A program made the translations under genes and the position numbers. Shown piece after piece: positions 234-62,277 of a stretch of DNA of 64,000 nucleotides. The notes beneath the pieces are model-generated. The model did no database searches, was not told the DNA's origin, and saw only the letters and a program-made list of their open reading frames with translations. Source of the stretch: Mytilus trossulus (Eukaryota); the NCBI RefSeq assembly GCF_036588685.1, contig NC_086373.1, positions 62,062,001-62,126,000 of the forward strand, given 5' to 3'. Position 1 is the stretch's first letter; each line of letters begins with the position of its first letter.

Positions 234-18149
<17,916 letters not shown>

Positions 18150-18889: not shown

Positions 18890-20771
18890 AGGACACTATT
18901 AAAGTGGACACTATATTTAATGCAGTAGACACTATTAAAGTGGACACTATATTTAATGCAGTAGACACTATTAAAGTGGACACTATATTTAAGGCAGAAG
19001 ACAATATTAAAGTGGACACTGTATTTAATGCAGAAGACAATATTAAAGTGGACACTGTATTTAATGCAGTAGACAATATTAAAGTGGACACTATATTTAA
19101 TGCAGTAGACAATATTAAAGTGGACACTGTATTTAATGCAGTAGACACTATTAAAGTGGACACTGTATTTAATGCAGTAGACAATATTAAAGTGGACACT
19201 ATATTTAAGACAGAAGACAATATTAAAGTGGACACTATATTTAATGCAGTAGACAATATTAAAGTGGACACTGTATTTAATGCAGTAGACAATATTAAAG
19301 TGGACACTATATTTAAGGCAGAAGACAATATTAAAGTGAACACTATATTTAATGCAGTAGACAATATTAAAGTGGACACTGTATTTAATGCAGTAGACAA
19401 TATTAAAGTGGACACTATATTTAAGACAGAAGACAATATTAAAGTGGACACTGTATTTAATGCAGTAGACAATATTAAAGTGGACACTATATTTAATGTA
19501 GTAGACACTATTAAAGTGGACACTGTTTTTAATGCAGTAGACAATATTAAAGTGGACACTATATTTAAGGCAGTAGACACTATTAAAGTGGACACTATAT
19601 TTAATGCAGTAGACAATTTTAAAGTGGACACTATATTTAAGGCAGTAGACACTATTAAAGTGGACACTGTATTTTATGCAGTAGACAATTTTAAAGTGGA
19701 CACTATATTTAAGGCAGTAGACACTATTAAAGTGGACACTATATTTAATGCAGTAGACAATTTTAAAGTGGACACTATATTTAAGGCAGTAGACACTATT
19801 AAAGTGGACACTGTATTTAATGCAGTAGACAATTTTAAAGTGGACACTATATTTAAGGCAGTAGACACTATTAAAGTGGACACTATATTTAATGCAGTAG
19901 ACACTATTAAAGTGGACACTATATTTAAGGCAGAAGACAATATTAAAGTGGACACTGTATTTAATGCAGAAGACAATATTAAAGTGGACACTGTATTTAA
20001 TGCAGTAGACAATATTAAAGTGGACACTATATTTAATGCAGTAGACAATATTAAAGTGGACACTGTATTTAATGCAGTAGACACTATTAAAGTGGACACT
20101 GTATTTAATGCAGTAGACAATATTAAAGTGGACACTATATTTAAGGCAGAAGACAATATTAAAGTGGACACTATATTTAATGCAGTAGACAATATTAAAG
20201 TGGACACTGTATTTAATGCAGTAGACAATATTAAAGTGGACACTATATTTAAGACAGAAGACAATATTAAAGTGGACACTGTATTTAATGCAGTAGACAA
20301 TATTAAAGTGGACACTATATTTAATGTAGTAGACACTATTAAAGTGGACACTGTATTTAATGCAGTAGACAATATTAAAGTGGACACTATATTTAAGGCA
20401 GTAGACACTATTAAAGTGGACACTATATTTAATGCAGTAGACAATTTTAAAGTGGACACTATATTTAAGGCAGTAAACACTATTAAAGTGGACACTATAT
20501 GTAATGCAGTAGACAATTTTAAAGTGGACACTATATTTAAGGCAGTAGACACTATTAAAGTGGACACTATATTTAATGCAGTAGACAATTTTAAATTGGA
20601 CACTATATTTAAGGCAGTAGACACTATTAAAGTGGACACTATATTTAATGCAGTAGACAATTTTAAAGTGGACACTATATTTAAGGCAGTAGACACTATT
20701 AAAGTGGACACTGTATTTAATGCAGTAGACAATTTTAAAGTGGACACTATATTTAATGCAGTAGACAATAT
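18890..20771. repeat. Homogeneous 36-bp minisatellite (about 52 units; dimer of 18-bp subunits)
   Basis: Unit ATTAAAGTGGACACTATATTTAATGCAGTAGACAAT with no indels. It accounts for the long ORFs 18739-20805, 18886-20850, 18714-19667 and 19674-20789. Confidence 0.97.
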
Positions 20772-22654
20772 TTTTGTAGACACGTTCATGACTAGACATT
20801 ATTAGGGGAGACATTTTAAAGTGATTACAGAAGACAGTATTACAATGCACACTATTACAGAAGAAACTAGTAAGATTGACACTATTACAATCCGCTGTAT
20901 TATAATGGACACCATTACAGTGAAAAGTATCACAGTGGGCATTATTGCAATGACACCATTACATTATACAATATTACAGTGTACAAAACTATTACAGTAG
21001 ACACTAGTACAGCGGATAGTAGTATAGTGGATACTATTACAGAAGACAGTATAACAGTGGACCCTATTACAACTGACAAAACTATTATAGGAGACATTGT
21101 TAGGGTGGAAAGAATTAAAGCAGACTATTATAGTTGAATCTTTTTCAGTGAACATTATTACAGTAGACCTTTAAAATTCACAGTTTTACAGTGGACACCT
21201 TTACAGTTAACATTATTACAATAGACACTAAGTGGACAGTATTACAGTGGAAATAATTTTTGTGCCCACTAATTCAGGAGACACCTAGATTTTTAGTATA
21301 ACAGTGGACAGTATAACAAAGGACACCATTATAGTGGAAAGTATTACAATGGACAGTATTACAATGAACACCGTTACAGTGGACAGTATTACAATGGACA
21401 CCCTAACAGTGAACAGTATTACAGTGGACACCATTACAGTGGATAGTATTACAGTGGACACTATTACAGCAGATACTATGACTGGATAATATTACAGTGG
21501 ACAGTATTACAGTGGAAATAACTTTTGTGCTCACTAATTCAGGAGACACCTAAATTTTTAGTATGACAGTGGACAGTATAATAATGGACACCATTACAGT
21601 GGACAGTATTACAATGGACGCCGTTACAGTGGACAGTATTACTATGGACACCATTACAGTGGACAGTATTACAGTGAACACCATTACAGTGAACACCATT
21701 ACAATGGACACCCTTACAGTGGACAGTATTACAGTGGACACCATTACAGTGAACAGTATTACAGTGGACACCATTACAGTGGATAGTATTACAGTGGACA
21801 CTATTACAGCAGACACTATGACAGTTGATAAAGTACAGTGGAAATAACTTTTGTGCTCACTAATGCAGGAAACACCTAAATTTTTAGTATGACAGTGGAC
21901 AGTATAACAATGGACACCATTATAGTGAACAGTATTACAATGGACAGCATTACAATGGACACCGTTACAGTGGACAGTATTACAATGGACACCATTACAG
22001 TGAACACCATTACAATGAACAGTATTACAGTGGACACCATTACAGTGGATAGTATTACAGTGGACACTATTACAGCAGACACTATGACAGTGGACACCAT
22101 TACAGTGGATAGTATTACAGTGGAAATAATTTGTGTGCTCACTAATTCAGGAGACACCTAAATGTTTAGTTTAACAGTGGACAGTATTACAGTGGACACT
22201 ATTACGGTAGACAATGGTTCAATATCCACTATTACAATGGACACAATAACATAAGACACCATTCGAGTAGACACTTTTATGGAAAGAACTAATTAGTATG
22301 GCCCAGTCAGTATGAGAATACAAGAAAGTAGAATACATTTCAAATAAAATAGTTCTTGTGCATACATGTAGCTGTATCTTTGTCAATAGGTAAAATGAAA
22401 GCTTGGGGACAGGGGATCACATTAGAAACATTCTTAAAAGTTTCTTTTGAATACTAAAAAAAAAAGATACAGTGTTATCGTATGCATATTTGCCCTGTTG
22501 TTAAGTATCAGAAATACTTGTTTTTTGTAACATCACACTTAAGGCATAGTCCTGACATGAAACGACTGTCACTTTATATGAACTTATACAATGTAGCCAT
22601 TATTGCTAAAAATTGCAGAATTGAACTTACAAACTGACGGGGCAAAGAAATGGT

Positions 22655-27159: not shown

Positions 27160-28898
27160 AAAGTAATATAAGGGCCTCAAAAGCAGGAGAAGGCACAATG
27201 TCATGCAAAATTTAAAAAAAACGTCATTCTTTTTTCTTTATCTTGCCGACAGACTTAAATTCAACTGTCATCATATGATATTTCATATTATTTATATTGA
27301 CAGCAGAAATAGCAGGCTAGACGAATGCGTTCCACAGACCCCTTTACGTATTATCCCTTGAGTATCCTTATTATCTAATTGCCATGCATATATGGGTGGT
27401 AAACTAATTAATACAACGAAAATCACACTCAAATCAAATGTTATGGTGTTGCCCTCATATAGAATTCAGTCTGCCTCATTGATCATAGAGTGTTGGTTAC
27501 TTAAGTTCAGTGGTACATATTTCGTGCATATTGAGAGAAAAAATTCTACCATAAATGTTCCAATGAGACAAATCTCTCGTCCAAGTCACAGTTTGTCAAA
27601 GTAAAACATTTATATTTAATTCCCTGGTTAGTCTTACTAGTTGTCGTGGTCTTGTTTCACTCCACTGGGTTTGTCACGGATTTCTTATTTCATCTTTAAT
27701 TTCTCTCAATTATTCACTTTCTTACGCAAATGCATGCTATATCAAACCTTAAAACGAAGCTAAATAATAACACTTCAAAATAATTAAAGTGTTATTAAAA
27801 CTTTAACAGTTTATTGTGAATTAAAATATTGACCACTTTAACAAATATTGATAAATGGTATATAAAATTATTATAAAGTGTGTTCAATAACATGGCTGTA
27901 GGTATTTTAAAAAGAATGAAAAACTTTTACCTTTTTTATGTTTCAAGTATACTGAGCGTATTTGTTTTTATTTAGATTTACGTCTACTTGTCCATTAAGC
28001 CATGCTTGTTTAAAGTCATAAGAAACCTCAAATTTAAAAAAAAATGGATAGTTTTCATTATACAACTTATGTACATGTACCTTTTTTTGATGAAAATTCT
28101 TTAATTTGTCCACATTTAGAAGAAGTTAACTTATTGTTGATTGCTTGCTTCCAGGAAGCAATTTACCGACATATTTTCCGTATGCATAGTGACCTGAGCG
28201 TAACCCTCCTCGTAAAAATCCGGTGATCGCAATACGCATGGATCTGTCATTAAAATAAACAATTATCTGATTGTACATGTTAAACACGTGCTCAATACCC
28301 ATTTTTGCGATTTGTTTACCATAAGGTGACAATCGGTAAACTTTGGCTTCAAAACACGGCATTTAATGAGCAGCCATAATTGTTAAATCATAACAGACAT
28401 ATCTAGAGAAAACAAAATTGACGATTATACGATGTATTTGCATAAAAAATGATAAAATCGTGCACAGAGTACTAAGTTTATCATCTATACATCAATTGCA
28501 CATCGTCCGGTTAAAGCCGTCATTTTTATTCCCAATTCGCTTTCCCATTTATGTATTTATACGACATTACACATGCATGTGGTCAATTAATATTTTCGGT
28601 TTCAATCTATTTCCCTGATTGTCGCTTAAACTCTCTGGACTTAAAATGGACTAATATAACGTTTTAGAGTAAAACAATTAAAACATTTTCATATCTTGAA
28701 TATGCATGAACTATCATCCGCCGGACGGCAATGGCCTAGATATTTAACATTTTTCAACTGTGGAATTTCGAAAACCGGAGAAACAGTTTATCTTATCAAA
28801 TAACTGAGGACCTCTTATATACGACAAGCTATGTAAACCTCTTTGCAAAAACAGTCATAATAATTAGTTATCAAAGGTACCAGGATTATAATTTAGTA

Positions 28899-28940
28899 CG
28901 CCAGACGCGCGTTTCGTCTACATAAGACTCACCAGTGACG
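28899..28940 (-). ncRNA. Minimal type-I hammerhead ribozyme, A6G core variant
   Basis: CGUCA-CUGGUGA-GUC uuaugua GAC-GAA-ACGCGCGU-C-UGGCG. Confidence 0.75.
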
Positions 28941-29243
28941 CTCAAATCAAAATATTTATAAAGCCAAACAAGTATAAAGTTGAAGAGCATTGAGGATCCA
29001 AAATTCCAAAAAGTTGTGCCAAATACTGCAAAGGTAATCTATACCTGGGATAAGAAAATTCTTAGTTTTTCGAAAATTTAAAGTTTTGTAAACGGAAAAT
29101 TTAAAAATGACCACATTATTGATATTCATGTCAACACAGAACTACTGGGCTGGTGATACCCTCGGGTACGAAACGTCCACCAGCAGTGGCATCGTCCCAG
29201 TGGTGTAAATAGTTATCAAAGGTACCAGGATTATAATTTAGTA

Positions 29244-29285
29244 CGCCAGACGCGCGTTTCGTCTACATAAGACTCACCAGTGACG
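29244..29285 (-). ncRNA. Minimal type-I hammerhead ribozyme, A6G core variant
   Basis: Identical to 28899-28940. Confidence 0.75.
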
Positions 29286-29588
29286 CTCAAATCAAAATAT
29301 TTATAAAGCCAAACAAGTATAAAGTTGAAGAGCATTGAGGATCCAAAATTCCAAAAAGTTGTGCCAAATACTGCTAAGGTAATCTATACCTGGGATAAGA
29401 AAATTCTTAGTTTTTCGAAAATTTAAAGTTTTGTAAACGGAAAATTTAAAAATGACCACATTATTGATATTCATGTCAACACAGAACTACTGGGCTGGTG
29501 ATACCCTCGGGTACGAAACTTCCACCAGCAGTGGCATCGTCCCAGTGGTGTAAATAGTTATCAAAGGTACCAGGATTATAATTTAGTA

Positions 29589-29630
29589 CGCCAGACGCGC
29601 GTTTCGTCTACATAAGACTCACCAGTGACG
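29589..29630 (-). ncRNA. Minimal type-I hammerhead ribozyme, A6G core variant
   Basis: Identical to 28899-28940. Confidence 0.75.
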
Positions 29631-29933
29631 CTCAAATCAAAATATTTATAAAGCCAAACAAGTATAAAGTTGAAGAGCATTGAGGATCCAAAATTCCAAA
29701 AAGTTGTGCCAAATACTGCTAAGGTAATCTATACCTGGGATAAGAAAATTCTAAGTTTTTCAAAAATTTAAAGTTTTGTAAACGGAAAATTTAAAAATGA
29801 CCACATTATTGATATTCATGTCAACACAGAACTACTGGGCTGGTGATACCCTCGGGGACGAAACGTCCACCAGCAGTGGCATCGACCCAGTGGTGTAAAT
29901 AGTTATCAAAGGTACCAGGATTATAATTTAGTA

Positions 29934-29974
29934 CGCCAGACGCGCGTTTCGTCACATAAGACTCACCAGTGACG
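29934..29974 (-). ncRNA. Minimal type-I hammerhead ribozyme, A6G variant with a 1-nt loop II deletion
   Basis: As above, with loop II uuaugu. Confidence 0.72.
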
Positions 29975-30277
29975 CTCAAATCAAAATATTTATAAAGCCA
30001 AACAAGTATAAAGTTGAAGAGCATTGAGGATCCAAAATTCCAAAAAGTTGTGCCAAATACTGCTAAGGTAATCTATACCTGGGATAAGAAAATTCTTAGT
30101 TTTTCGAAAATTTAAAGTTTTGTAAACGGAAAATTTAAAAATGACCACATTATTGATATTCATGTCAAAACAGAACTACTGGGCTGGTGATACCCTCAGG
30201 GACGAAACGTCCACCAGCAGTGGCATCGACCCAGTGGTGTAAATAGTTATCAAAGGTACCAGGGTTATAATTTAGTA

Positions 30278-30319
30278 CGCCAGACGCGCGTTTCGTCTTC
30301 ATTAAACTCATCAGTGACG
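30278..30319 (-). ncRNA. Minimal type-I hammerhead ribozyme, canonical core
   Basis: CGUCA-CUGAUGA-GUU uaaugaa GAC-GAA-ACGCGCGU-C-UGGCG. All conserved core bases, GUC cleavage triplet, palindromic helix III. Confidence 0.88.
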
Positions 30320-30630
30320 CTCAAATCAAAATATTTATAAAGCCAAACAAGTATAAAGTTGAAGAGCATTGAGGATCCAAAATTCCAAAAAGTTGTGCCA
30401 AATACTGTTAAGGTAATCTATACCTGGGATAAGAAAATTCTTAGTTTTTCGAAAATTTAAAGTTTTGTAAAGGGAAAATTTAAAAAATGACCACATTATT
30501 GATATTCATGTCAACACAGAAGTGTTGACTACTAGGCTGGTGATACCCTCGGGGACGAAACGTCCACCAGCAGTGGCATCGACCCAGTGGTGTAAATAGT
30601 TATCAAAGGTACCAGGATTATAATTTAGTA

Positions 30631-30672
30631 CGCCAGACGCGCGTTTCGTCTACATAAGACTCACCAGTGACG
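30631..30672 (-). ncRNA. Minimal type-I hammerhead ribozyme, A6G core variant
   Basis: Identical to 28899-28940. Confidence 0.75.
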
Positions 30673-32384
30673 CTCAAATCAAAATATGTATAAAGCCAAA
30701 CAAGTATAAAGTTGAAGAGCATTGAGGATCCAAAATTCCAAAAAGTTGTGCCAAATAACAACGATGAAGCTTAAAGCTAAGACCAGATTTCAAAAATAAA
30801 TAGATCACTAAACTCAGCTGCATAAATATTCTAACAGAAATCATATTGAAAGTCAGTGACCTGATAGAATGGTCAAATTGATTGTATTTCCATTTGAAAA
30901 TGATGACCTGAATCAAAATATCTGCCTTTCGACATACCTATTTGCCTAGAGTTTGGTGCTTATTCATAGCAAGCGTACACTTTTACAGCGTGAAAGCTCT
31001 TGATATTTGTTTTTGACCTTTAGTTAGATGTTTAATAATTAAATTTTATCCATGTATAATAGCAGAAAATGCACAAGCGATGATTTTAAACATCTGATCA
31101 ATGAACAGCTTTAGAAAGATAATTATGCACTGAAACACCAGAAAATTCATCTAAATCCTCTGAATCAACATTCATTCCCATTGATTATCCTTAATGTCAT
31201 CTTATTTGCTTATACATTTAGTATCCATATTTTTATAGATAGGTAATTACTGTTCCAGTGGTCTACATTTTCAGAAAAATCTAAAATATATTATTTTTAA
31301 TTTTGTTTTGTAATATGACAATACATCTATAATAGAGGCAATACACATTTAATTTGTCCCTAGCGTGGTCTATTTAAATACACTGATCGACACTTAACTA
31401 TACTATGATAAATGAACTTTTTATTAAACTGATTAAAAATAAAGATAGCCAGACAATAAAATGTTAAAACCCCGATGACATATTTTTCTGAAAATGACAA
31501 ATAATTTCTCTGTCAATATAAGCTTATTAACTAAAAGATACTCTTTAAAAGTCTACATAGACAATTTTCGGATCGTTTTTTAAACTTATATTTCAATATT
31601 TTTTTATAAATTAAGACGATTATGGCAATTTTCTTTCAACGACAAGGGTACCTTGAAATCGCTTGATCTATTGGTATTTTTCTGACTAAAGTGAAAGGAA
31701 AGCGGGGAAAGATACGACAAGAGATAAAAACGCCACAATAACAGAAATTTTTGTTCGTATATTGTACATGTATCAACAACAAAAGCCTGTTTTGGATATC
31801 TTTTTGTTTAGATGCAATTAGTTCTACTTGAGGTAAATAATTAAGTTACCTTTTCTCATTAACAGTATAACTTTTTAAGCCTATCTTTTTACCAAGTCAC
31901 GTAAATGGGTTTCTTACACGAGAAAGAATCTGCGTTTTTCTTAGATATAAATCAACATCGTCGATAATTCGTGATATTTATTGATATTTGTAGTTAGTTT
32001 AATTGTACAAAAAATAAACATTACGATGGATATCTTCACAGTATTTTGTCTGATAATAAATCGAGGTAAGTCGTAAGTTTCTGAATAAGATTTTGATTTT
32101 TGAATTTTGAATATTAGTTAAGACTTTTTAAATGCGTGCGGGGATACTTGTGTTCAATTCACATATCATGTAAACATTTGAAAAACTTTCAAAATTTGAT
32201 TTGAGTAACAATGTACATGTATCTCTCTGGTATTCTAACAATAAGTTTAATGCAATGCACAACAGAGGAATGTGTATTGCTCATATAAATTCTTCCATAA
32301 AACACACAAATATATCATTCCATTACTTGGATACACGGATAACGTATATAGAAATTGGGTATAATTGAATTCACTTGTCCAAAT

Positions 32385-49316: not shown

Positions 49317-52300
49317 TTACAAGAATGTGCCTCCTTCAGTGTCAATTATTAATGACGGATTTTCCGTAATTTCCTCGTCATATTTATTTTTTTCAGGTAC
49401 ACACTGCATACTTTGTTTGACGCCATAACGGTTTATGTTAATAGATGTCTTCAGTTTGGTATTATCTTTTGGTTCAATACGGACTGCATTCAAGGAAGAA
49501 ATTGCTGGATCTTCATCGAAATAGTTGTATGGTAATAGGTAAAAGCTTAACTCCATCCCAGGAGTAGGTGTAACCGGCAAGTCTTCAGTGTGTGGAATAT
49601 GGTGAATGCCCATTGTGACCCATGCTACCAAATCCTAAAAAAAAAATATAATCTGCAAATTATATAAGAAAGGAATGCATATTTTCTTTCTGTAATCTGT
49701 GATATTTTTCTCTTAGGAATATATCGTAAGAAAGCTTTTATGGTGTTTTAATAATATGCAGTTTTATCAAAACATCATTGACTTTGGCTCTATTTTCACT
49801 GAGATAAGCATGAGTATAATATTTCTAAATTTATACTTGTTGAAGATATTTAGATGAATTAGAGATTGGTTTCCTTTGCTACAGATATAAACATGATAAA
49901 AGCAACAGATTGGATCAGACTATCCGCATTGTTTTCAGAGTTTATGGAATGTAACTTGCATTTTTTTTAATGATACAATGGTGTGTATGATCATTTTGTT
50001 TTGTGATAACTCGCACTTCATATTCACAGTGTATGATCCTTGATGATATGATGAACTTAAATTTTCTGAGCAAAGGATTAAACCTATCATGTAGTCGTGC
50101 TTTTTTCATTCTGTAATCCGAATGAATATATGTATATGTTACAGTAAATAGGTGAAATTAGGAATTACACGTAATGACTACACATTTCAGTTAATACCTG
50201 TAATTACTAGACAATTTAGTAATTACCTGTATTTACTAGTTGTTTCAGTGATTACTGGTAATTACTGATTTTTTTTGTCATTTTTACAGCTATTTACTAA
50301 CTTGATTTTTTGTTTTAAAATTAAAAACATAACTCAAGATTCAAAATAAGAAAGTAAAGGGGTAGGGATTTTAAGGGAGCTTACTTGAGGATGTAGGAAT
50401 ATAAGGCACATCAAAAGTGCATACTCTTTACTGTTTGTGAATTGAAACTGGAAAATGGTTGTTTTATATGTCTTGAAATTCTGTAAATGTATGCATGCAA
50501 GACAATGATATCAATCCAAAATTGATTTTCATAATTTTGTTAAACTAAAATCTCAATCATGCACTGTGGTTTAAAACTTTAAAATAACTTTCTCCAAATA
50601 TCTTGGATTTCTATCAAACTTGGACAGAAGCTAAATGTTTATGATCATAAGATAATATCCGAAAGTAAAGCTTGTAAAAAAAAATCCTTTTTTTTCCTAT
50701 ATCACTTATAATCAGGATAAATGGACTAGTTTTTTCCCAGTTAACATTGCATACACTCTGAAGTTTAAGTTTTTAAAACATTAGATTTTATAAACCATCC
50801 TTGATTTTTACCCAATTTTGACAGAAGTTTCTTATAGTACTAGTTAAAGATAGTATCTAGAGGAAAATTTTAATATTTTTTCCTCATTTTTGTTGAGCCT
50901 GCGATTAATAGCAAAAGTAGTCGAGACTGTTTGTTCTGCAAAACCCTTACAATTTTAATAGCTTAATACATCGATAACCCATCTTCAGCTAGGGGTTGAA
51001 TTGAAGGTCACATGAATACGTATTCAATGAGGTCCAAATATTCACTCGCAAGTGCACAACTCATCAACCTTGTTTCTCAGCTAATTATAGAACTGGATTT
51101 TTCCATTTCTGATTTCCATGTCTGCTGAAATTGGTCAAAAATTTTCTGTATAATACTCAACTTTAACCATTTTGGATTAAAACTAAAGTTACTCAGATTT
51201 AACCAAATATTTGAAAGTCCATAATTATTCAAGATATTTTGAATACAAATCAACCATTCAATATTCTAAGACTACTTACTGATCATTTAGTTAGTATTAC
51301 CATAACTTTTGATCATCTGACCATAATAAAACATTGTTTTAGCAGTCAGTAAATAGGTGTAAAAACTCATTTTAAAGTTAGTAATTACTGGTAATAACTG
51401 GGCCGTTTCAGGAATTACTTGTATTAACTAAGTGCATCGGGAATTACCTGTAATTCCTAAATTTTAGTAATTACATGTAATTCCTAATTTCACCTATTTA
51501 CTGTAACATATATATATATATAGTGATATGAAAAATTAAATGGAATTTTCTTTGATTTTTGCGTATTTCTAAAGTTTTGACAATAATCATACATAATGAA
51601 TGACATTCTAGAAGTTGCGTGCATCGATTTAGTTGTTGGTGCATCTTTTTTATATCATTAAGAATTTTACAACAAAACAGGACTAAGGCACACAAGTTGC
51701 AAAACTATATATTACGTCCTGGAAGCAAAACAAATCATGAATACTTAGTAAATACCTAAATGTGAGTTATAAAAATCTTGCATTTATCGTGTTTATAGAA
51801 TGTAAAAACTCTGAATATATATGTTAGTATGGTCTATATCACCGACATATACTCAAAGATAAATATGCATATTTGTTCACCTCTTAAATAAACTCATCAT
51901 ATATAGATACAAGGAGGATTGAAATATGTTGTATGTGAGCTTGACGCGCGTTTCGTGTACAAAAGACTCATCAGTGACGCTTGAATCATATTTAGAGGCA
52001 AATAAAGTACGAAGTTGAAGAGTTTGAGGACTACAAATTCGTATCGTAAAAGTGTTTCCAGATACACCTAAGGTACTCTATACATGAGGTAGAAAAGCCT
52101 CTGTTTTCAAACATTCTAAGTTTTGTAATCAGTTAATTTATAATTATGACCATATCATTATATGTCATGTCAACAAAGGAGTGTTGATGGGCTAATTTCT
52201 ACAAGATTATCGTTTAGTTTTTATAATTAAATGTTGAATACGTCATATACAACTTACCTCATCCACTATTGGTTCATTATCATCAATAAAATTCTGAAAA

Positions 52301-60840: not shown

Positions 60841-61745
60841 ATGATAGTCCGACAATTCTTACTTATCTGTCATGATAGTCCGACAGTTCTTACTTATCTG
60901 TCATGATAGTCCCGGACAGTTCTTACTTATCTGTCATGATAGTCCGACAGTTCTTACTTACCTGTCATGATAGTCCGACAGTTCTTATTTATCTATCATG
61001 ATAGTCAGACAGTTCTTACTTATCTGTCATGATAGTCCGACAGTTCTTACTTATCTGTCATGATAGTTCGACAGTTCTTACTTATATGTCATGATAGTCC
61101 GACTGTTCTTACTTATCTATCATGATAGTCCGATAGTTCTTACTTATCTATCATGATAGTCCGACAGTTCTTACTTATCTGTCATGATAGTCCGACAGTT
61201 CTTACTAATCTATCATGATAGTCCGACAGTTCTCACTTATCAGTCATGATAGTCCGACAGTTCTTACTTATCTATCATGATAGTTCGACAGTTCTTACTT
61301 ATCTGTCATGATAGTCCGACAGTTCTTACTAATCCATCATGATAGTCCGACAGTTCTTACTTATCTGTCATGATAGTCCGACAGTTCTTACTTATCTGTC
61401 ATGATAGTCCGACAGTTCTTACTTATCTATTATGATAGTCCGACAGTTCTTACTTATCTGTCATGATAGTCCGACAGTTCTTACTTATCTATCATGATAG
61501 TCCGACAGTTCTTACTTATCTGTCATGATAGTCCGACAGTTCTTACTTATCTATCATGATAGTCCGACAGTTCTTACTTATCTGTCATGATAGTCCGACA
61601 GGTCGTACTTATCTGTCATGATAGTCCGACAGTTCTTACTTATCTGTCATGATAGTCCGACAGTTCTTACTAATCTATCATGATAGTCCGACAGTTCTTA
61701 CTTATCTGTCATGATAGTCCGACAATTCTTACTTATCTGTCATGA
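60841..61745. repeat. 31-bp minisatellite, about 29 copies
   Basis: Unit ATGATAGTCCGACAGTTCTTACTTATCTRTC, contiguous, with no spacers. Confidence 0.97.
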
Positions 61746-62277
61746 TTCAAATCCGATGATTTTATTTTTTGGTTCTATTCAGGCATCAGACAATTATACT
61801 TTACTGTATCGAAACCCCTAGGCATGATACAAATTCATTTACACGACTTTTGTAAACATTTTGAATCAAGTACAGTCTATAATTTGATATTTTTTGTGTG
61901 TGTTCATTTTTTGTTTCGACAAGAAATTCTGAAGGGGGACTTTCCGAACAATTATTTATAAATTTTGTTAACAAACTCATTTTTAGAAATTTTTGTAATC
62001 TTAAAATCCTGTTAGATAACTAGCATCAATGATTCAGTAAGATTTTAATGATTTTAATGCATTGTTTTGAATATTGAGCGATAGACAAGAAACAACATTA
62101 AAAAACAAAGAAAGAACCCATTTCATTGAAGCTATTTATACCAGTTTACATTATTGGTCATTTTGTTTATTTTATTTTCAGATATGCAAGTACGCAAAGT
62201 GTAGGACCGCATCGTTATTCCTACTTTTTTTACTCTTAGCTTAGAATATTTAGTGCTTATTCAAATTCATATTTACA

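What the first reader, a model, noticed from the sequence alone, without database searches (positions are those of the whole stretch)
28866..30757. Tandem array of ~345-nt monomers each carrying a hammerhead ribozyme (retrozyme / circular-RNA locus)
Seen: 5.5 near-identical, non-coding, head-to-tail units. On the minus strand each reads CGUCA-CUG(A/G)UGA-helix II-GAA-ACGCGCGU-C-UGGCG, a type-I minimal hammerhead with a GUC cleavage site and a self-complementary helix III (ACGCGCGU). Known: minimal HHRs with palindromic helix III cleave as dimers; they typify Penelope-like elements and non-LTR retrozymes, whose tandem transcripts are cut to monomers and circularised (reported for several metazoans, including mussels as I recall). 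Inference: the array is the footprint of rolling reverse transcription of a ~345-nt circular RNA, and may still produce one. It looks like plain satellite DNA and is invisible in the ORF track.
Basis: partly seen in the sequence, partly recalled or inferred. Interest (0 to 1): 0.9.

Follow-up and report, generated by a model that had tools for sequence, protein, structure and literature searches.

The report
Decayed mussel hammerhead retrozyme array
This 1.9-kb repeat is a genomic copy of the hammerhead-ribozyme "retrozyme" family already described in Mytilus mussels; the family is transcribed, but five of this copy's six ribozymes carry a core mutation, so this locus is probably a dead copy.

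Summary
There are 5.5 head-to-tail units of 345 bp (97% alike). Each carries a type-I hammerhead motif on the minus strand. Rfam Hammerhead_1 matches all six at 25-30.5 bits, below its gathering score of 34.

It is the known Mytilus non-LTR retrozyme family (Cervera & de la Pena 2020). Their primers match it, and the genome (Mytilus trossulus) holds thousands of dispersed copies. Raw RNA-seq shows the family is transcribed, mostly in the ribozyme sense.

This array is probably not a source of circles:
- Five of six ribozymes read CUGGUGA (A6G).
- 90-98% of RNA reads carry the canonical A.
- Four units look like later DNA-level duplicates.

Added here:
- 30 of 33 arrays end at one monomer position, about 42 nt past the cleavage site. 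Their 5' starts scatter, as in target-primed reverse transcription.
- The hairpin domain next to that end is homologous (nhmmer E 2e-5) to the junction of a young, hammerhead-less, N-terminal GIY-YIG Penelope-like element. That element is a candidate mobiliser.

A 2026 preprint shows a retrozyme-PLE link in Xenopus. This scan had already noted retrozymes elsewhere in this genome.

The parts
28861..30757 (-). Retrozyme array. In the element's own register it is one 5'-truncated unit (163 nt) plus five full units (353, 344, 345, 345, 342 nt).
   Evidence: TRF period 345 x 5.5; unit alignment; units cut in register
30630..30673 (-). Hammerhead motif, core CUGGUGA (A6G)
   Evidence: RF00163 25.7 bits; regex
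30277..30320 (-). Hammerhead motif with the canonical CUGAUGA core, the only one in the array. Its helix II keeps pairing through a U-G wobble.
   Evidence: RF00163 30.5 bits, E 6e-5
29933..29975 (-). Hammerhead motif, A6G, with a 1-nt deletion in helix II/loop 2
   Evidence: RF00163 25 bits
29588..29631 (-). Hammerhead motif, A6G
   Evidence: RF00163 25.7 bits
29243..29286 (-). Hammerhead motif, A6G. The A6G base is 29277. The predicted cut lies between 29249 and 29248.
   Evidence: RF00163 25.7 bits; in RNA reads 29277 is T (= A in the RNA) in 90-98%
28898..28941 (-). Hammerhead motif, A6G, in the last unit
   Evidence: RF00163 25.7 bits
30527..30594 (-). Conserved hairpin ('junction') domain, copy 1. 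It starts right after the monomer position where integrated arrays end.
   Evidence: Register; fold; homology to the PLE junction
30174..30241 (-). Junction domain, copy 2
   Evidence: MFE -26.8 kcal/mol, z -2.4
29830..29897 (-). Junction domain, copy 3
29485..29552 (-). Junction domain, copy 4, with private changes in stem A and hairpin C
29140..29207 (-). Junction domain, copy 5, with a private change in hairpin C
   Evidence: RNA reads carry the family state at 29195 and 29167 in about 98-99%
28861..28866 (-). 3' terminus of the insertion (...GATAACTA; monomer position about 161-166). This is the family's usual end point.
   Evidence: 30 of 33 arrays end at monomer position 161-169
7758..8020 (+). 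Second, short copy of the same family (0.76 unit). It is 5'-truncated and ends at the same terminus (position 168).
   Evidence: blastn; sequence
51943..52178 (-). Third copy, diverged (77-81%), closer to the published Mg353 subfamily. Its helix I 3' strand is mutated.

Best explanation
The array is a genomic insertion of the Mytilus non-LTR retrozyme, a non-coding, non-autonomous retroelement. Each ~345-nt unit encodes a type-I hammerhead ribozyme on the minus strand.

How the family works:
- Published for M. galloprovincialis: tandem units are transcribed, the hammerhead cuts after GUC to give unit-length RNA, and a host RNA ligase closes it into an abundant circle.
- Shown here: transcription, mostly in the ribozyme sense.
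- Inferred here: new DNA copies are made by target-primed reverse transcription. Synthesis starts at a fixed template position about 42 nt downstream of the cleavage site and immediately upstream of a conserved hairpin domain. It runs round the template for a variable number of turns, which gives arrays with one fixed 3' end and scattered 5' truncations. The reverse transcriptase is probably that of a young Penelope-like element (PLE) with an N-terminal GIY-YIG nuclease, because that element has a homologous domain at its own 3'-end/5'-start junction.

This particular array is an old, decaying copy. Five of six ribozymes carry A6G in the catalytic core. Part of the array (units W2-W5) arose by later DNA-level duplication. 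It contributes at most a few percent of the family's RNA.
For: Identity with the known family:
- Monomer size, low GC (37%) and absence of ORFs.
- The same hammerhead and second domain as clone Mg353, and matches to the authors' primers.
- 5406 first-look candidates spread over many chromosomes at 91-95% identity, against about 5000 reported.
- The genome is Mytilus trossulus (P0094; its contig length equals that of C7).

Expression:
- 3173-9124 raw RNA reads per run were laid on one monomer.
- In three runs there is a 3-7-fold excess of first mates on the + strand.
- Unit-to-unit back-joints are present, and there is no pile of ends at the cut site.

Decay of this locus:
- The core is CUGGUGA in 5 of 6 units, against 109 of 131 canonical cores in other arrays.
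- RNA reads show the canonical base at 29277 in 90-98%.
- The pattern of shared derived variants points to later duplication.

Insertion mode:
- The 3' ends lie at monomer position 161-169 in 30 of 33 arrays, while the 5' starts range from about 1 to 278.
- A 27-nt copy of the retrozyme 3' end sits in one repeat unit of the PLE and is absent from the paralogous unit, so it ends exactly at that terminus.

PLE link:
- Local alignment score is 44, against shuffles of 19.3 +/- 3.6 (maximum 35 of 500).
- An nhmmer profile built only from retrozyme lineages hits the PLE junction at E 1.8e-5 to 2.7e-5 in 98 kb.
- Stem A keeps pairing through three double changes.
- The same fold is the minimum-energy structure in five lineages.
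- The PLE has an N-terminal GIY-YIG, open frames up to 1056 aa, 99% identical copies and 5'-truncated copies.
Against: - Circularity cannot be read from these data. Back-joints fit tandem transcripts as well as circles.
- The strand call assumes a dUTP-type library.
- The monomer as a circle folds no better than shuffles (z about 0), unlike the 'highly self-paired' description in the literature.
- Target-site duplications are not clearly above the control.
- The PLE link rests on one PLE family, one covarying lineage pair and about 85 nt. The PLE could simply have captured a retrozyme fragment.
- The effect of A6G is taken from established hammerhead mutagenesis and was not measured for this motif.
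- One canonical unit remains, and 2-3% of reads are at least 99% like this array.
Confidence: 0.85

Rival explanations
1. This array is itself an active source of a ~345-nt minus-strand circular RNA.
For: One unit keeps the canonical core (30277-30320). 2-10% of family reads carry the array's G at 29277, and about 2.7% of laid reads are at least 99% like the array. The palindromic helix III could allow double-hammerhead pairing between neighbouring units (sequence).
Against: Releasing a monomer needs two working cut sites, and only one canonical core is present. The G share in RNA (2-10%) is about the same as the share of A6G among genomic copies elsewhere (8 of 131), so it needs no contribution from this locus. 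Variants private to units 4 and 5 are seen in only about 1-2% of reads.
Confidence: 0.1
2. It is plain satellite DNA that arose and spread only by DNA-level slippage or unequal crossing-over. The hammerhead motif is a passenger, and no RNA intermediate is involved.
For: Within the array, neighbouring units are more alike, and four units share derived changes. This is what unequal crossing-over produces.
Against: Thousands of short arrays are dispersed on all large contigs. They share one 3' end and have scattered 5' truncations. There is a 27-nt filled/empty site. Transcription is strand-biased. Circles are published for the sister species.
Confidence: 0.04
3. The repeats are pseudo-LTR fragments of a hammerhead-bearing Penelope-like element, not a separate non-autonomous element.
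For: PLEs form partial tandems and carry hammerheads in pLTRs in many animals. Retrozyme fragments lie in 4 of 30 PLE loci sampled.
Against: There is no PLE coding sequence within or next to the array. No hammerhead was found at E <= 1 in the non-coding parts of L056, one copy of the PLE family that shares the junction domain, nor (apart from two retrozyme-type fragments) in the ~3.3-kb samples around the nuclease domain of 15 other PLE loci. Helix III here is 2 bp plus a tetraloop, not the minimal PLE form.
Confidence: 0.03

Closest known systems
Mytilus galloprovincialis non-LTR retrozyme (clone Mg353; Cervera & de la Pena, NAR 2020, PMC7229834)
   Same: Same genus, tandem units of about 350 bp, and the same type-I hammerhead (identical GAAACGCGCGUC|UGGCGU half and helix I). 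It shares the second domain CCACUGGGUCGAUGCCACUGCUGGUGGA...GAGGGUAUCACCAGCCCAGUAG, the low GC content and the thousands of copies. The authors' primers match the array.
   Different: Different species (M. trossulus) and subfamily: the stretch after UGGCGUA and the loop of hairpin C differ. Five of six ribozymes here are A6G. The paper does not describe the fixed 3' end or a PLE-like domain. A full-length alignment to Mg353 was not run, because that would have meant typing a long sequence.
Xenopus non-LTR retrozymes related to PLE pseudo-LTRs (Li, Clavereau & Pollet, bioRxiv 2026, 10.64898/2026.07.22.740005)
   Same: Retrozymes share terminal sequence with Penelope-like elements and are proposed to be their non-autonomous derivatives.
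   Different: That work covers vertebrates and hammerhead-bearing Neptune/Poseidon PLEs, and it states that other organisms were not examined. Here the partner candidate has an N-terminal nuclease and no detectable hammerhead. The shared part is a hairpin domain spanning the 3'-end/5'-start junction, not the ribozyme.
Newt/axolotl satellite 2 hammerhead repeats
   Same: Tandem units of about 330-350 bp with a type-I hammerhead and a weak palindromic helix III; expressed as linear and circular monomers.
   Different: The amphibian motifs need dimers for good cleavage. The mussel motif has a 2-bp helix III and cleaves as a single copy, though slowly. There is no sequence similarity.
Minimal hammerheads of Penelope-like elements and Terminons
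   Same: Type-I topology, association with retroelements, and tandem arrangement.
   Different: Those lack helix III and the loop contacts, and they sit in the pLTRs of coding elements. This motif has helix III and sits in a non-coding 345-nt unit.
SINE/LINE partnerships and non-autonomous Chlamys PLE derivatives
   Same: A non-coding element shares a short terminal module with an autonomous element. Insertions are 5'-truncated and 3'-anchored. Non-autonomous Chlamys elements also form multicopy head-to-tail insertions.
   Different: Here the template is thought to be circular. The shared module lies just downstream of the copy start site, rather than forming the 3' tail.

Membership tests
Metazoan non-LTR retrozyme (Cervera & de la Pena 2020), Mytilus family | Short head-to-tail repeats of about 350-390 bp in mussels, from dimers to multimers | tested here: met
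   Period 345, 5.5 copies. Other arrays hold 1.5 to more than 15 units.
Metazoan non-LTR retrozyme (Cervera & de la Pena 2020), Mytilus family | One type-I hammerhead per unit with the conserved core CUGANGA / GAAAY / RUH | tested here: inconclusive
   GAAAC and GUC are present in all six units. CUGANGA is present in only one of six, and the other five read CUGGUGA. In the family at large, 109 of 131 motifs are canonical.
Metazoan non-LTR retrozyme (Cervera & de la Pena 2020), Mytilus family | Sequence homology to the cloned mussel retrozyme | tested here: met
   Primer 109R matches with 1 mismatch in four units, and primer 110R with 1 mismatch in one unit; shuffles give 0 matches. Motif-by-motif comparison with Mg353.
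Metazoan non-LTR retrozyme (Cervera & de la Pena 2020), Mytilus family | Low GC (<45-50%), non-coding, no LTR/PBS/PPT | tested here: met
   GC 0.37 and 0.34-0.40. No ORF of 90 aa or more. No tRNA-like gene. The flanks are unrelated to each other.
Metazoan non-LTR retrozyme (Cervera & de la Pena 2020), Mytilus family | Thousands of dispersed genomic copies | tested here: met
   5406 first-look candidates; matches on at least 17 contigs.
Metazoan non-LTR retrozyme (Cervera & de la Pena 2020), Mytilus family | Expressed as unit-length circular RNA | not testable with these tools
   Family transcription in the ribozyme sense and unit-to-unit joints are seen. Short reads on a tandem repeat cannot tell circles from multimers. 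Circles were shown by northern blot in M. galloprovincialis.
Rfam RF00163 Hammerhead_1 | Covariance-model score at or above the gathering score (34 bits) | tested here: not met
   25-30.5 bits here; 33 bits for canonical relatives; no hit at gathering. The matches cover the full model with E 6e-5 to 4e-3, so the motif is real but short of the curated cut-off.
Minimal PLE-type hammerhead | Helix III absent or reduced to the conserved pair; located in the pLTR of a coding PLE | tested here: not met
   Helix III is A-U and C-G plus a GCGC loop. No PLE coding sequence lies at the locus.
N-terminal-endonuclease PLE (Naiad-type), for the candidate partner element | GIY-YIG domain N-terminal to the RT in one ORF; pLTR/partial tandems; frequent 5' truncation; no canonical hammerhead | tested here: inconclusive
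   GIY-YIG lies at aa 143-235 of an ORF of up to 1056 aa. Homologues carry PF01541 and PF00078. Tandem copies lie 4.28-4.33 kb apart. The 5' truncation points are scattered. No hammerhead at E <= 1. The RT part and the CxC motif of this copy were not examined, and no tree was built.

The most novel reading that the evidence does not exclude
In mussels the hammerhead retrozyme is copied by a hammerhead-less, N-terminal-GIY-YIG (Naiad-type) Penelope-like element. What the two elements share is not the ribozyme. It is an ~70-90-nt hairpin domain that spans the junction between the 3' end and the 5' start. On this reading, the reverse transcriptase recognises the domain and begins cDNA synthesis at the nucleotide just upstream of it, on a circular or tandem template. 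That would explain both the single fixed 3' end of retrozyme arrays and the partial-tandem architecture of PLE insertions.
Probability: 0.4. Interest if true: 0.6.

Novelty: already known. Interest (0 to 1): 0.3.

Why it matters
The locus itself adds nothing new. It is one more, mostly dead, copy of a published mussel retrozyme.

The side results do bear on an open point. The 2020 review states that metazoan retrozyme repeats show no conserved motif that could reveal which autonomous element copies them. The 2026 preprint linking retrozymes to PLEs did not examine invertebrates. A fixed copy-start position next to a domain shared with a young PLE gives a concrete, testable handle on how circular RNAs are reverse-transcribed and inserted in an animal genome.

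Tried and rejected
- Rfam at gathering thresholds over the window: no hit. Hits appear only with E-value thresholds.
- Whole-monomer circular folding: MFE -64 to -70 kcal/mol, no better than mononucleotide shuffles (z -0.5 to +0.6). So there is no thermodynamic sign of a viroid-like rod. A first script with a dinucleotide shuffle timed out.
- Target-site duplications: the longest shared words at the two junctions (mean 5.3 nt) are barely above mismatched-locus controls (mean 4.8 nt), and 18% against 6% reach 7 nt or more. This is inconclusive.
- tRNA-derived SINE or Pol III idea (GGGTCGATGCC resembles a B box): ARAGORN finds no tRNA, the unit is full of T4-5 runs, and the same motif sits in a 4.3-kb PLE. 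Dropped.
- The junction domain as an HDV-like or other self-cleaving ribozyme that would create the fixed end: no Rfam ribozyme family other than the hammerhead at E <= 10 on the array or E <= 1 on the PLE. No pile of RNA ends at that position. The only HDV-like register would cut 11-13 nt away from the terminus. Not supported.
- My first pseudoknot reading (stems E and B together) is sterically doubtful, because no linker separates the two 3' strands. The nested fold A+E+C is the minimum-energy structure in all five lineages.
- Enrichment of PLE 3' fragments near retrozyme arrays: not testable, because the fragment's words are too common to be searched in this genome.
- A6G as a hotspot or editing footprint: 8 of 131 copies in six other arrays, about the share seen in RNA. 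There is no evidence for it.
- A full alignment to clone Mg353 was left out, because it would have meant typing a long sequence.


Full report
**What is there**

Tandem Repeats Finder reports one array at 28861-30757 with period 345, 5.5 copies, 97% matches and no indels. Aligning the units confirms near-identity, and no ORF of 90 aa or more overlaps the array.

Each unit carries the motif GCGUCA-CUG(G/A)UGA-GUCUUAUGUAGAC-GAAAC-GCGCGUC-UGGCGU on the minus strand. Its parts are:
- Helix I has six pairs, two of them G-U.
- Helix II has four pairs with a 5-nt loop.
- Helix III has two pairs (A-U, C-G) closing a GCGC loop. The eight letters ACGCGCGU are self-complementary, so two motifs could also pair with each other.
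- The cleavage triplet is GUC.

Rfam's Hammerhead_1 model aligns over its full length to all six copies. The scores are 25-30.5 bits, against a gathering score of 34. At gathering thresholds the window therefore gives no hit at all. Relatives with an intact core reach 33 bits. The motif is real: there are six copies, E-values run from 6e-5 to 4e-3, and the published primer matches four of them against none in shuffles. It simply falls short of the curated cut-off.

**What it is**

The monomer has 5406 first-look candidates in the 1.3-Gb genome. The scored matches lie on many contigs at 91-95% identity, always as short arrays.

The genome is Mytilus trossulus. A protein hit of 99% identity is named from that species, and its contig length (85,406,108) equals that of contig C7 of this assembly.

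Cervera and de la Pena (PMC7229834) described this kind of element in M. galloprovincialis:
- about 5000 type-I hammerheads in repeats of 350-390 bp;
- slow self-cleavage of a cloned unit (kobs about 0.1 per min);
- abundant circular RNA on northern blots.

Their clone Mg353 and their primers share the hammerhead with this array almost letter for letter. They also share a second block, CCACUGGGUCGAUGCCACUGCUGGUGGA...GAGGGUAUCACCAGCCCAGUAG. Primer 109R matches four units with one mismatch, and primer 110R matches one unit with one mismatch. The finding is therefore a member of a known family.

The minimal PLE motifs lack helix III. This motif is the retrozyme type.

**Expression**

I laid raw reads of four RNA-seq runs of the same species label on one circular permutation of the monomer (29074-29418), accepting reads at least 88% alike.
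- Between 3173 and 9124 reads were laid per run, which is 0.025-0.12% of the records read.
- In three runs, first mates lie on the + strand 3-7 times more often than on the minus strand. In the usual stranded libraries this means minus-strand RNA, the ribozyme sense. The fourth run is unstranded.
- Many reads join the end of the unit back to its start. Both tandem transcripts and circles give this, so it does not distinguish them.
- No position shows a pile of molecule ends, including the predicted cut between 29249 and 29248. This fits RNA that is mostly uncut or re-ligated, but it does not prove circles.

**State of this locus**

Five of the six ribozymes read CUGGUGA. Only the unit at 30277-30320 keeps CUGAUGA. 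Position A6 belongs to the invariant core. The describers of the family accept a motif only if it reads CUGANGA. That A6 substitutions cripple cleavage is established hammerhead biochemistry and was not measured here.

In 33 other arrays, 109 of 131 motifs are canonical and 8 carry the same A6G. In the RNA reads the base at 29277 is the canonical one in 90-98%. Two variants private to units 4 and 5 (29195, 29167) appear in only 1-2% of reads.

I cut the units in the element's own register and compared each variable site with 59 other genomic copies.
- Unit W1 keeps an ancestral 8-nt stretch and the ancestral A6.
- Units W2-W5 share the derived deletion and A6G.
- W2-W5 are 97.4-98.6% alike but only 93-94% like W1.

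So at least part of the array was built by later DNA-level duplication or conversion, not in one round of reverse transcription. A transcript with a single working ribozyme cannot release a monomer. This locus is most likely a dead copy.

**How copies are made**

Across 33 arrays with a visible end, 30 stop at monomer position 161-169 (...GGUACCUUUGAUAACUAUU). That is about 42 nt downstream of the cleavage site. The 5' starts scatter from about position 1 to 278.

The array studied here follows the rule. In that register it is one 5'-truncated unit followed by five full units. The second copy in the window (7758-8020) follows it as well.

In the RNA reads, depth drops at exactly this position (29206-29208), and reads run on into many unrelated sequences. 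These reads are equally frequent in both orientations. This is what array ends embedded in varied flanks would give.

A fixed 3' end with variable 5' truncation is the signature of target-primed reverse transcription. Multi-unit products fit a circular or tandem template, as the retrozyme model proposes. Target-site duplications were not clearly above control.

**A candidate partner**

A search for GIY-YIG domains found many Penelope-like elements. One family (L056, L057, L061 and others) has these features:
- The nuclease lies at aa 143-235 of an ORF of up to 1056 aa.
- Homologues also carry a reverse transcriptase domain.
- Copies are 99% identical.
- Head-to-tail copies lie 4.28-4.33 kb apart.
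- The 5' truncation points are scattered.
- No hammerhead was found at E <= 1 in its non-coding parts.

Its 3' terminus (...UUUUACUUUUUAC) was located from fragments with variable starts and one common end.

The first ~85 nt after that terminus are homologous to the retrozyme's second conserved block. In the retrozyme, that block likewise begins right after the array terminus.
- The local alignment score is 44, against 19.3 +/- 3.6 for shuffles (maximum 35 of 500).
- An nhmmer profile built from five retrozyme-lineage sequences only hits L056:989-1082 and its relatives at E 1.8e-5 to 2.7e-5 in 98 kb.
- The last eight letters before the junction are also alike (CUAUUUAC against CUUUUUAC).
- The minimum-energy fold is the same in five lineages: a 7-bp outer stem, a 6-bp stem GAUGCC/GGUAUC and a small hairpin.
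- The outer stem changes from ACUGGGU/GCCCAGU to ACCAAGU/ACUUGGU, with three pairs changed on both sides.

This covariation rests on one lineage contrast, so it is suggestive only.

One repeat unit in the PLE's 3' region also contains a 27-nt insert. The insert equals the last 27 nt of the retrozyme unit and ends exactly at the retrozyme terminus. The paralogous repeat unit lacks it.

A July 2026 preprint reports that Xenopus retrozymes are related to PLE pseudo-LTRs and proposes that retrozymes are non-autonomous PLE derivatives. It did not look at invertebrates. Earlier notes of this scan reached a similar conclusion for another retrozyme family in this genome. The idea is therefore not new. 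What is new here is the mussel case, with a hammerhead-less partner and a shared junction domain. This part is inference, and I put it at about 40%.

**Limits**
- As a result, the PLE's full unit, a wider census of termini and relatives from other bivalves could not be examined.
- The full alignment to clone Mg353 was left out, so as not to type a long sequence.

**Verdict**

The locus is an ordinary and probably inactive member of a known family. The finding as given is of low interest. The fixed copy-start and the PLE-like junction domain make a moderately interesting lead.

Noticed in passing
window 7758-8020 (+): Short 5'-truncated copy of the same retrozyme (monomer positions 256-344 plus 1-168). 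It ends at the family's usual 3' terminus. Its hammerhead has the canonical CUGAUGA, but helix III and the cleavage triplet are mutated (GAAACGAGCAUC).
   Followed up: partly
window 51943-52178 (-): Diverged retrozyme fragment (77-81%), closer to the published Mg353 subfamily (helix II GUCUUUUGUACAC). Its helix I 3' strand is replaced, so it is decayed.
   Followed up: partly
L056:552-578 (G000:C4, PLE 3' region): A 27-nt insert equal to the last 27 nt of the retrozyme unit (27/29 identity over 29 nt). It sits in one ~270-nt repeat unit of the PLE and is absent from the paralogous unit at about 288. The insert-bearing version of this PLE region is abundant: the 40 best of 1360 first-look candidates match it in full at 99-100% identity.
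   Followed up: partly
L024:3072/3073 (G000:C8): A seven-unit retrozyme array ends at its canonical terminus and abuts, with no spacer, a 165-nt PLE 3'-end fragment that ends at the PLE terminus. This is either a chimeric cDNA made by template switching or two insertions at one site.
   Followed up: no
L045:4712-5177 (G000:C11): A 465-nt fragment of the PLE 3' end, in reverse orientation, interrupts a retrozyme array between monomer positions 230 and 231, with no loss or gain of retrozyme letters.
   Followed up: no
L051, L063, L065, L073 (PLE loci): Four of 30 PLE loci of ~3.3 kb, sampled around GIY-YIG domains, hold retrozyme fragments. That is far more than the genome-wide density of arrays would predict. 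It may reflect shared targets, repeat-rich regions or co-insertion.
   Followed up: no
L043:1433-1860 (+) and L043:4902-5005 (+): Two further element families carry a diverged version of the junction domain. One has a weak hammerhead (23 bits) about 300 nt upstream, so the domain is shared by several retrozyme-like families.
   Followed up: partly
G000, many contigs: The N-terminal GIY-YIG PLE family has many copies with open frames of 1056 aa, 99% mutual identity and head-to-tail pairs 4276-4332 nt apart. It looks recently active.
   Followed up: partly
window 18892-20772; 21295-22124; 60841-61746: Three minisatellites: 36 bp x 52 copies, 30/45 bp x 18-26 copies, and 31 bp x 29 copies. The first produces spurious ORFs of 654-688 aa on both strands.
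   Followed up: no
protein P0067: A 545-aa protein, 64% identical to the mussel PLE, is filed in NCBI under a gammaproteobacterial symbiont MAG of the clam Lucinoma. It is most likely host bivalve DNA binned into the MAG.
   Followed up: no
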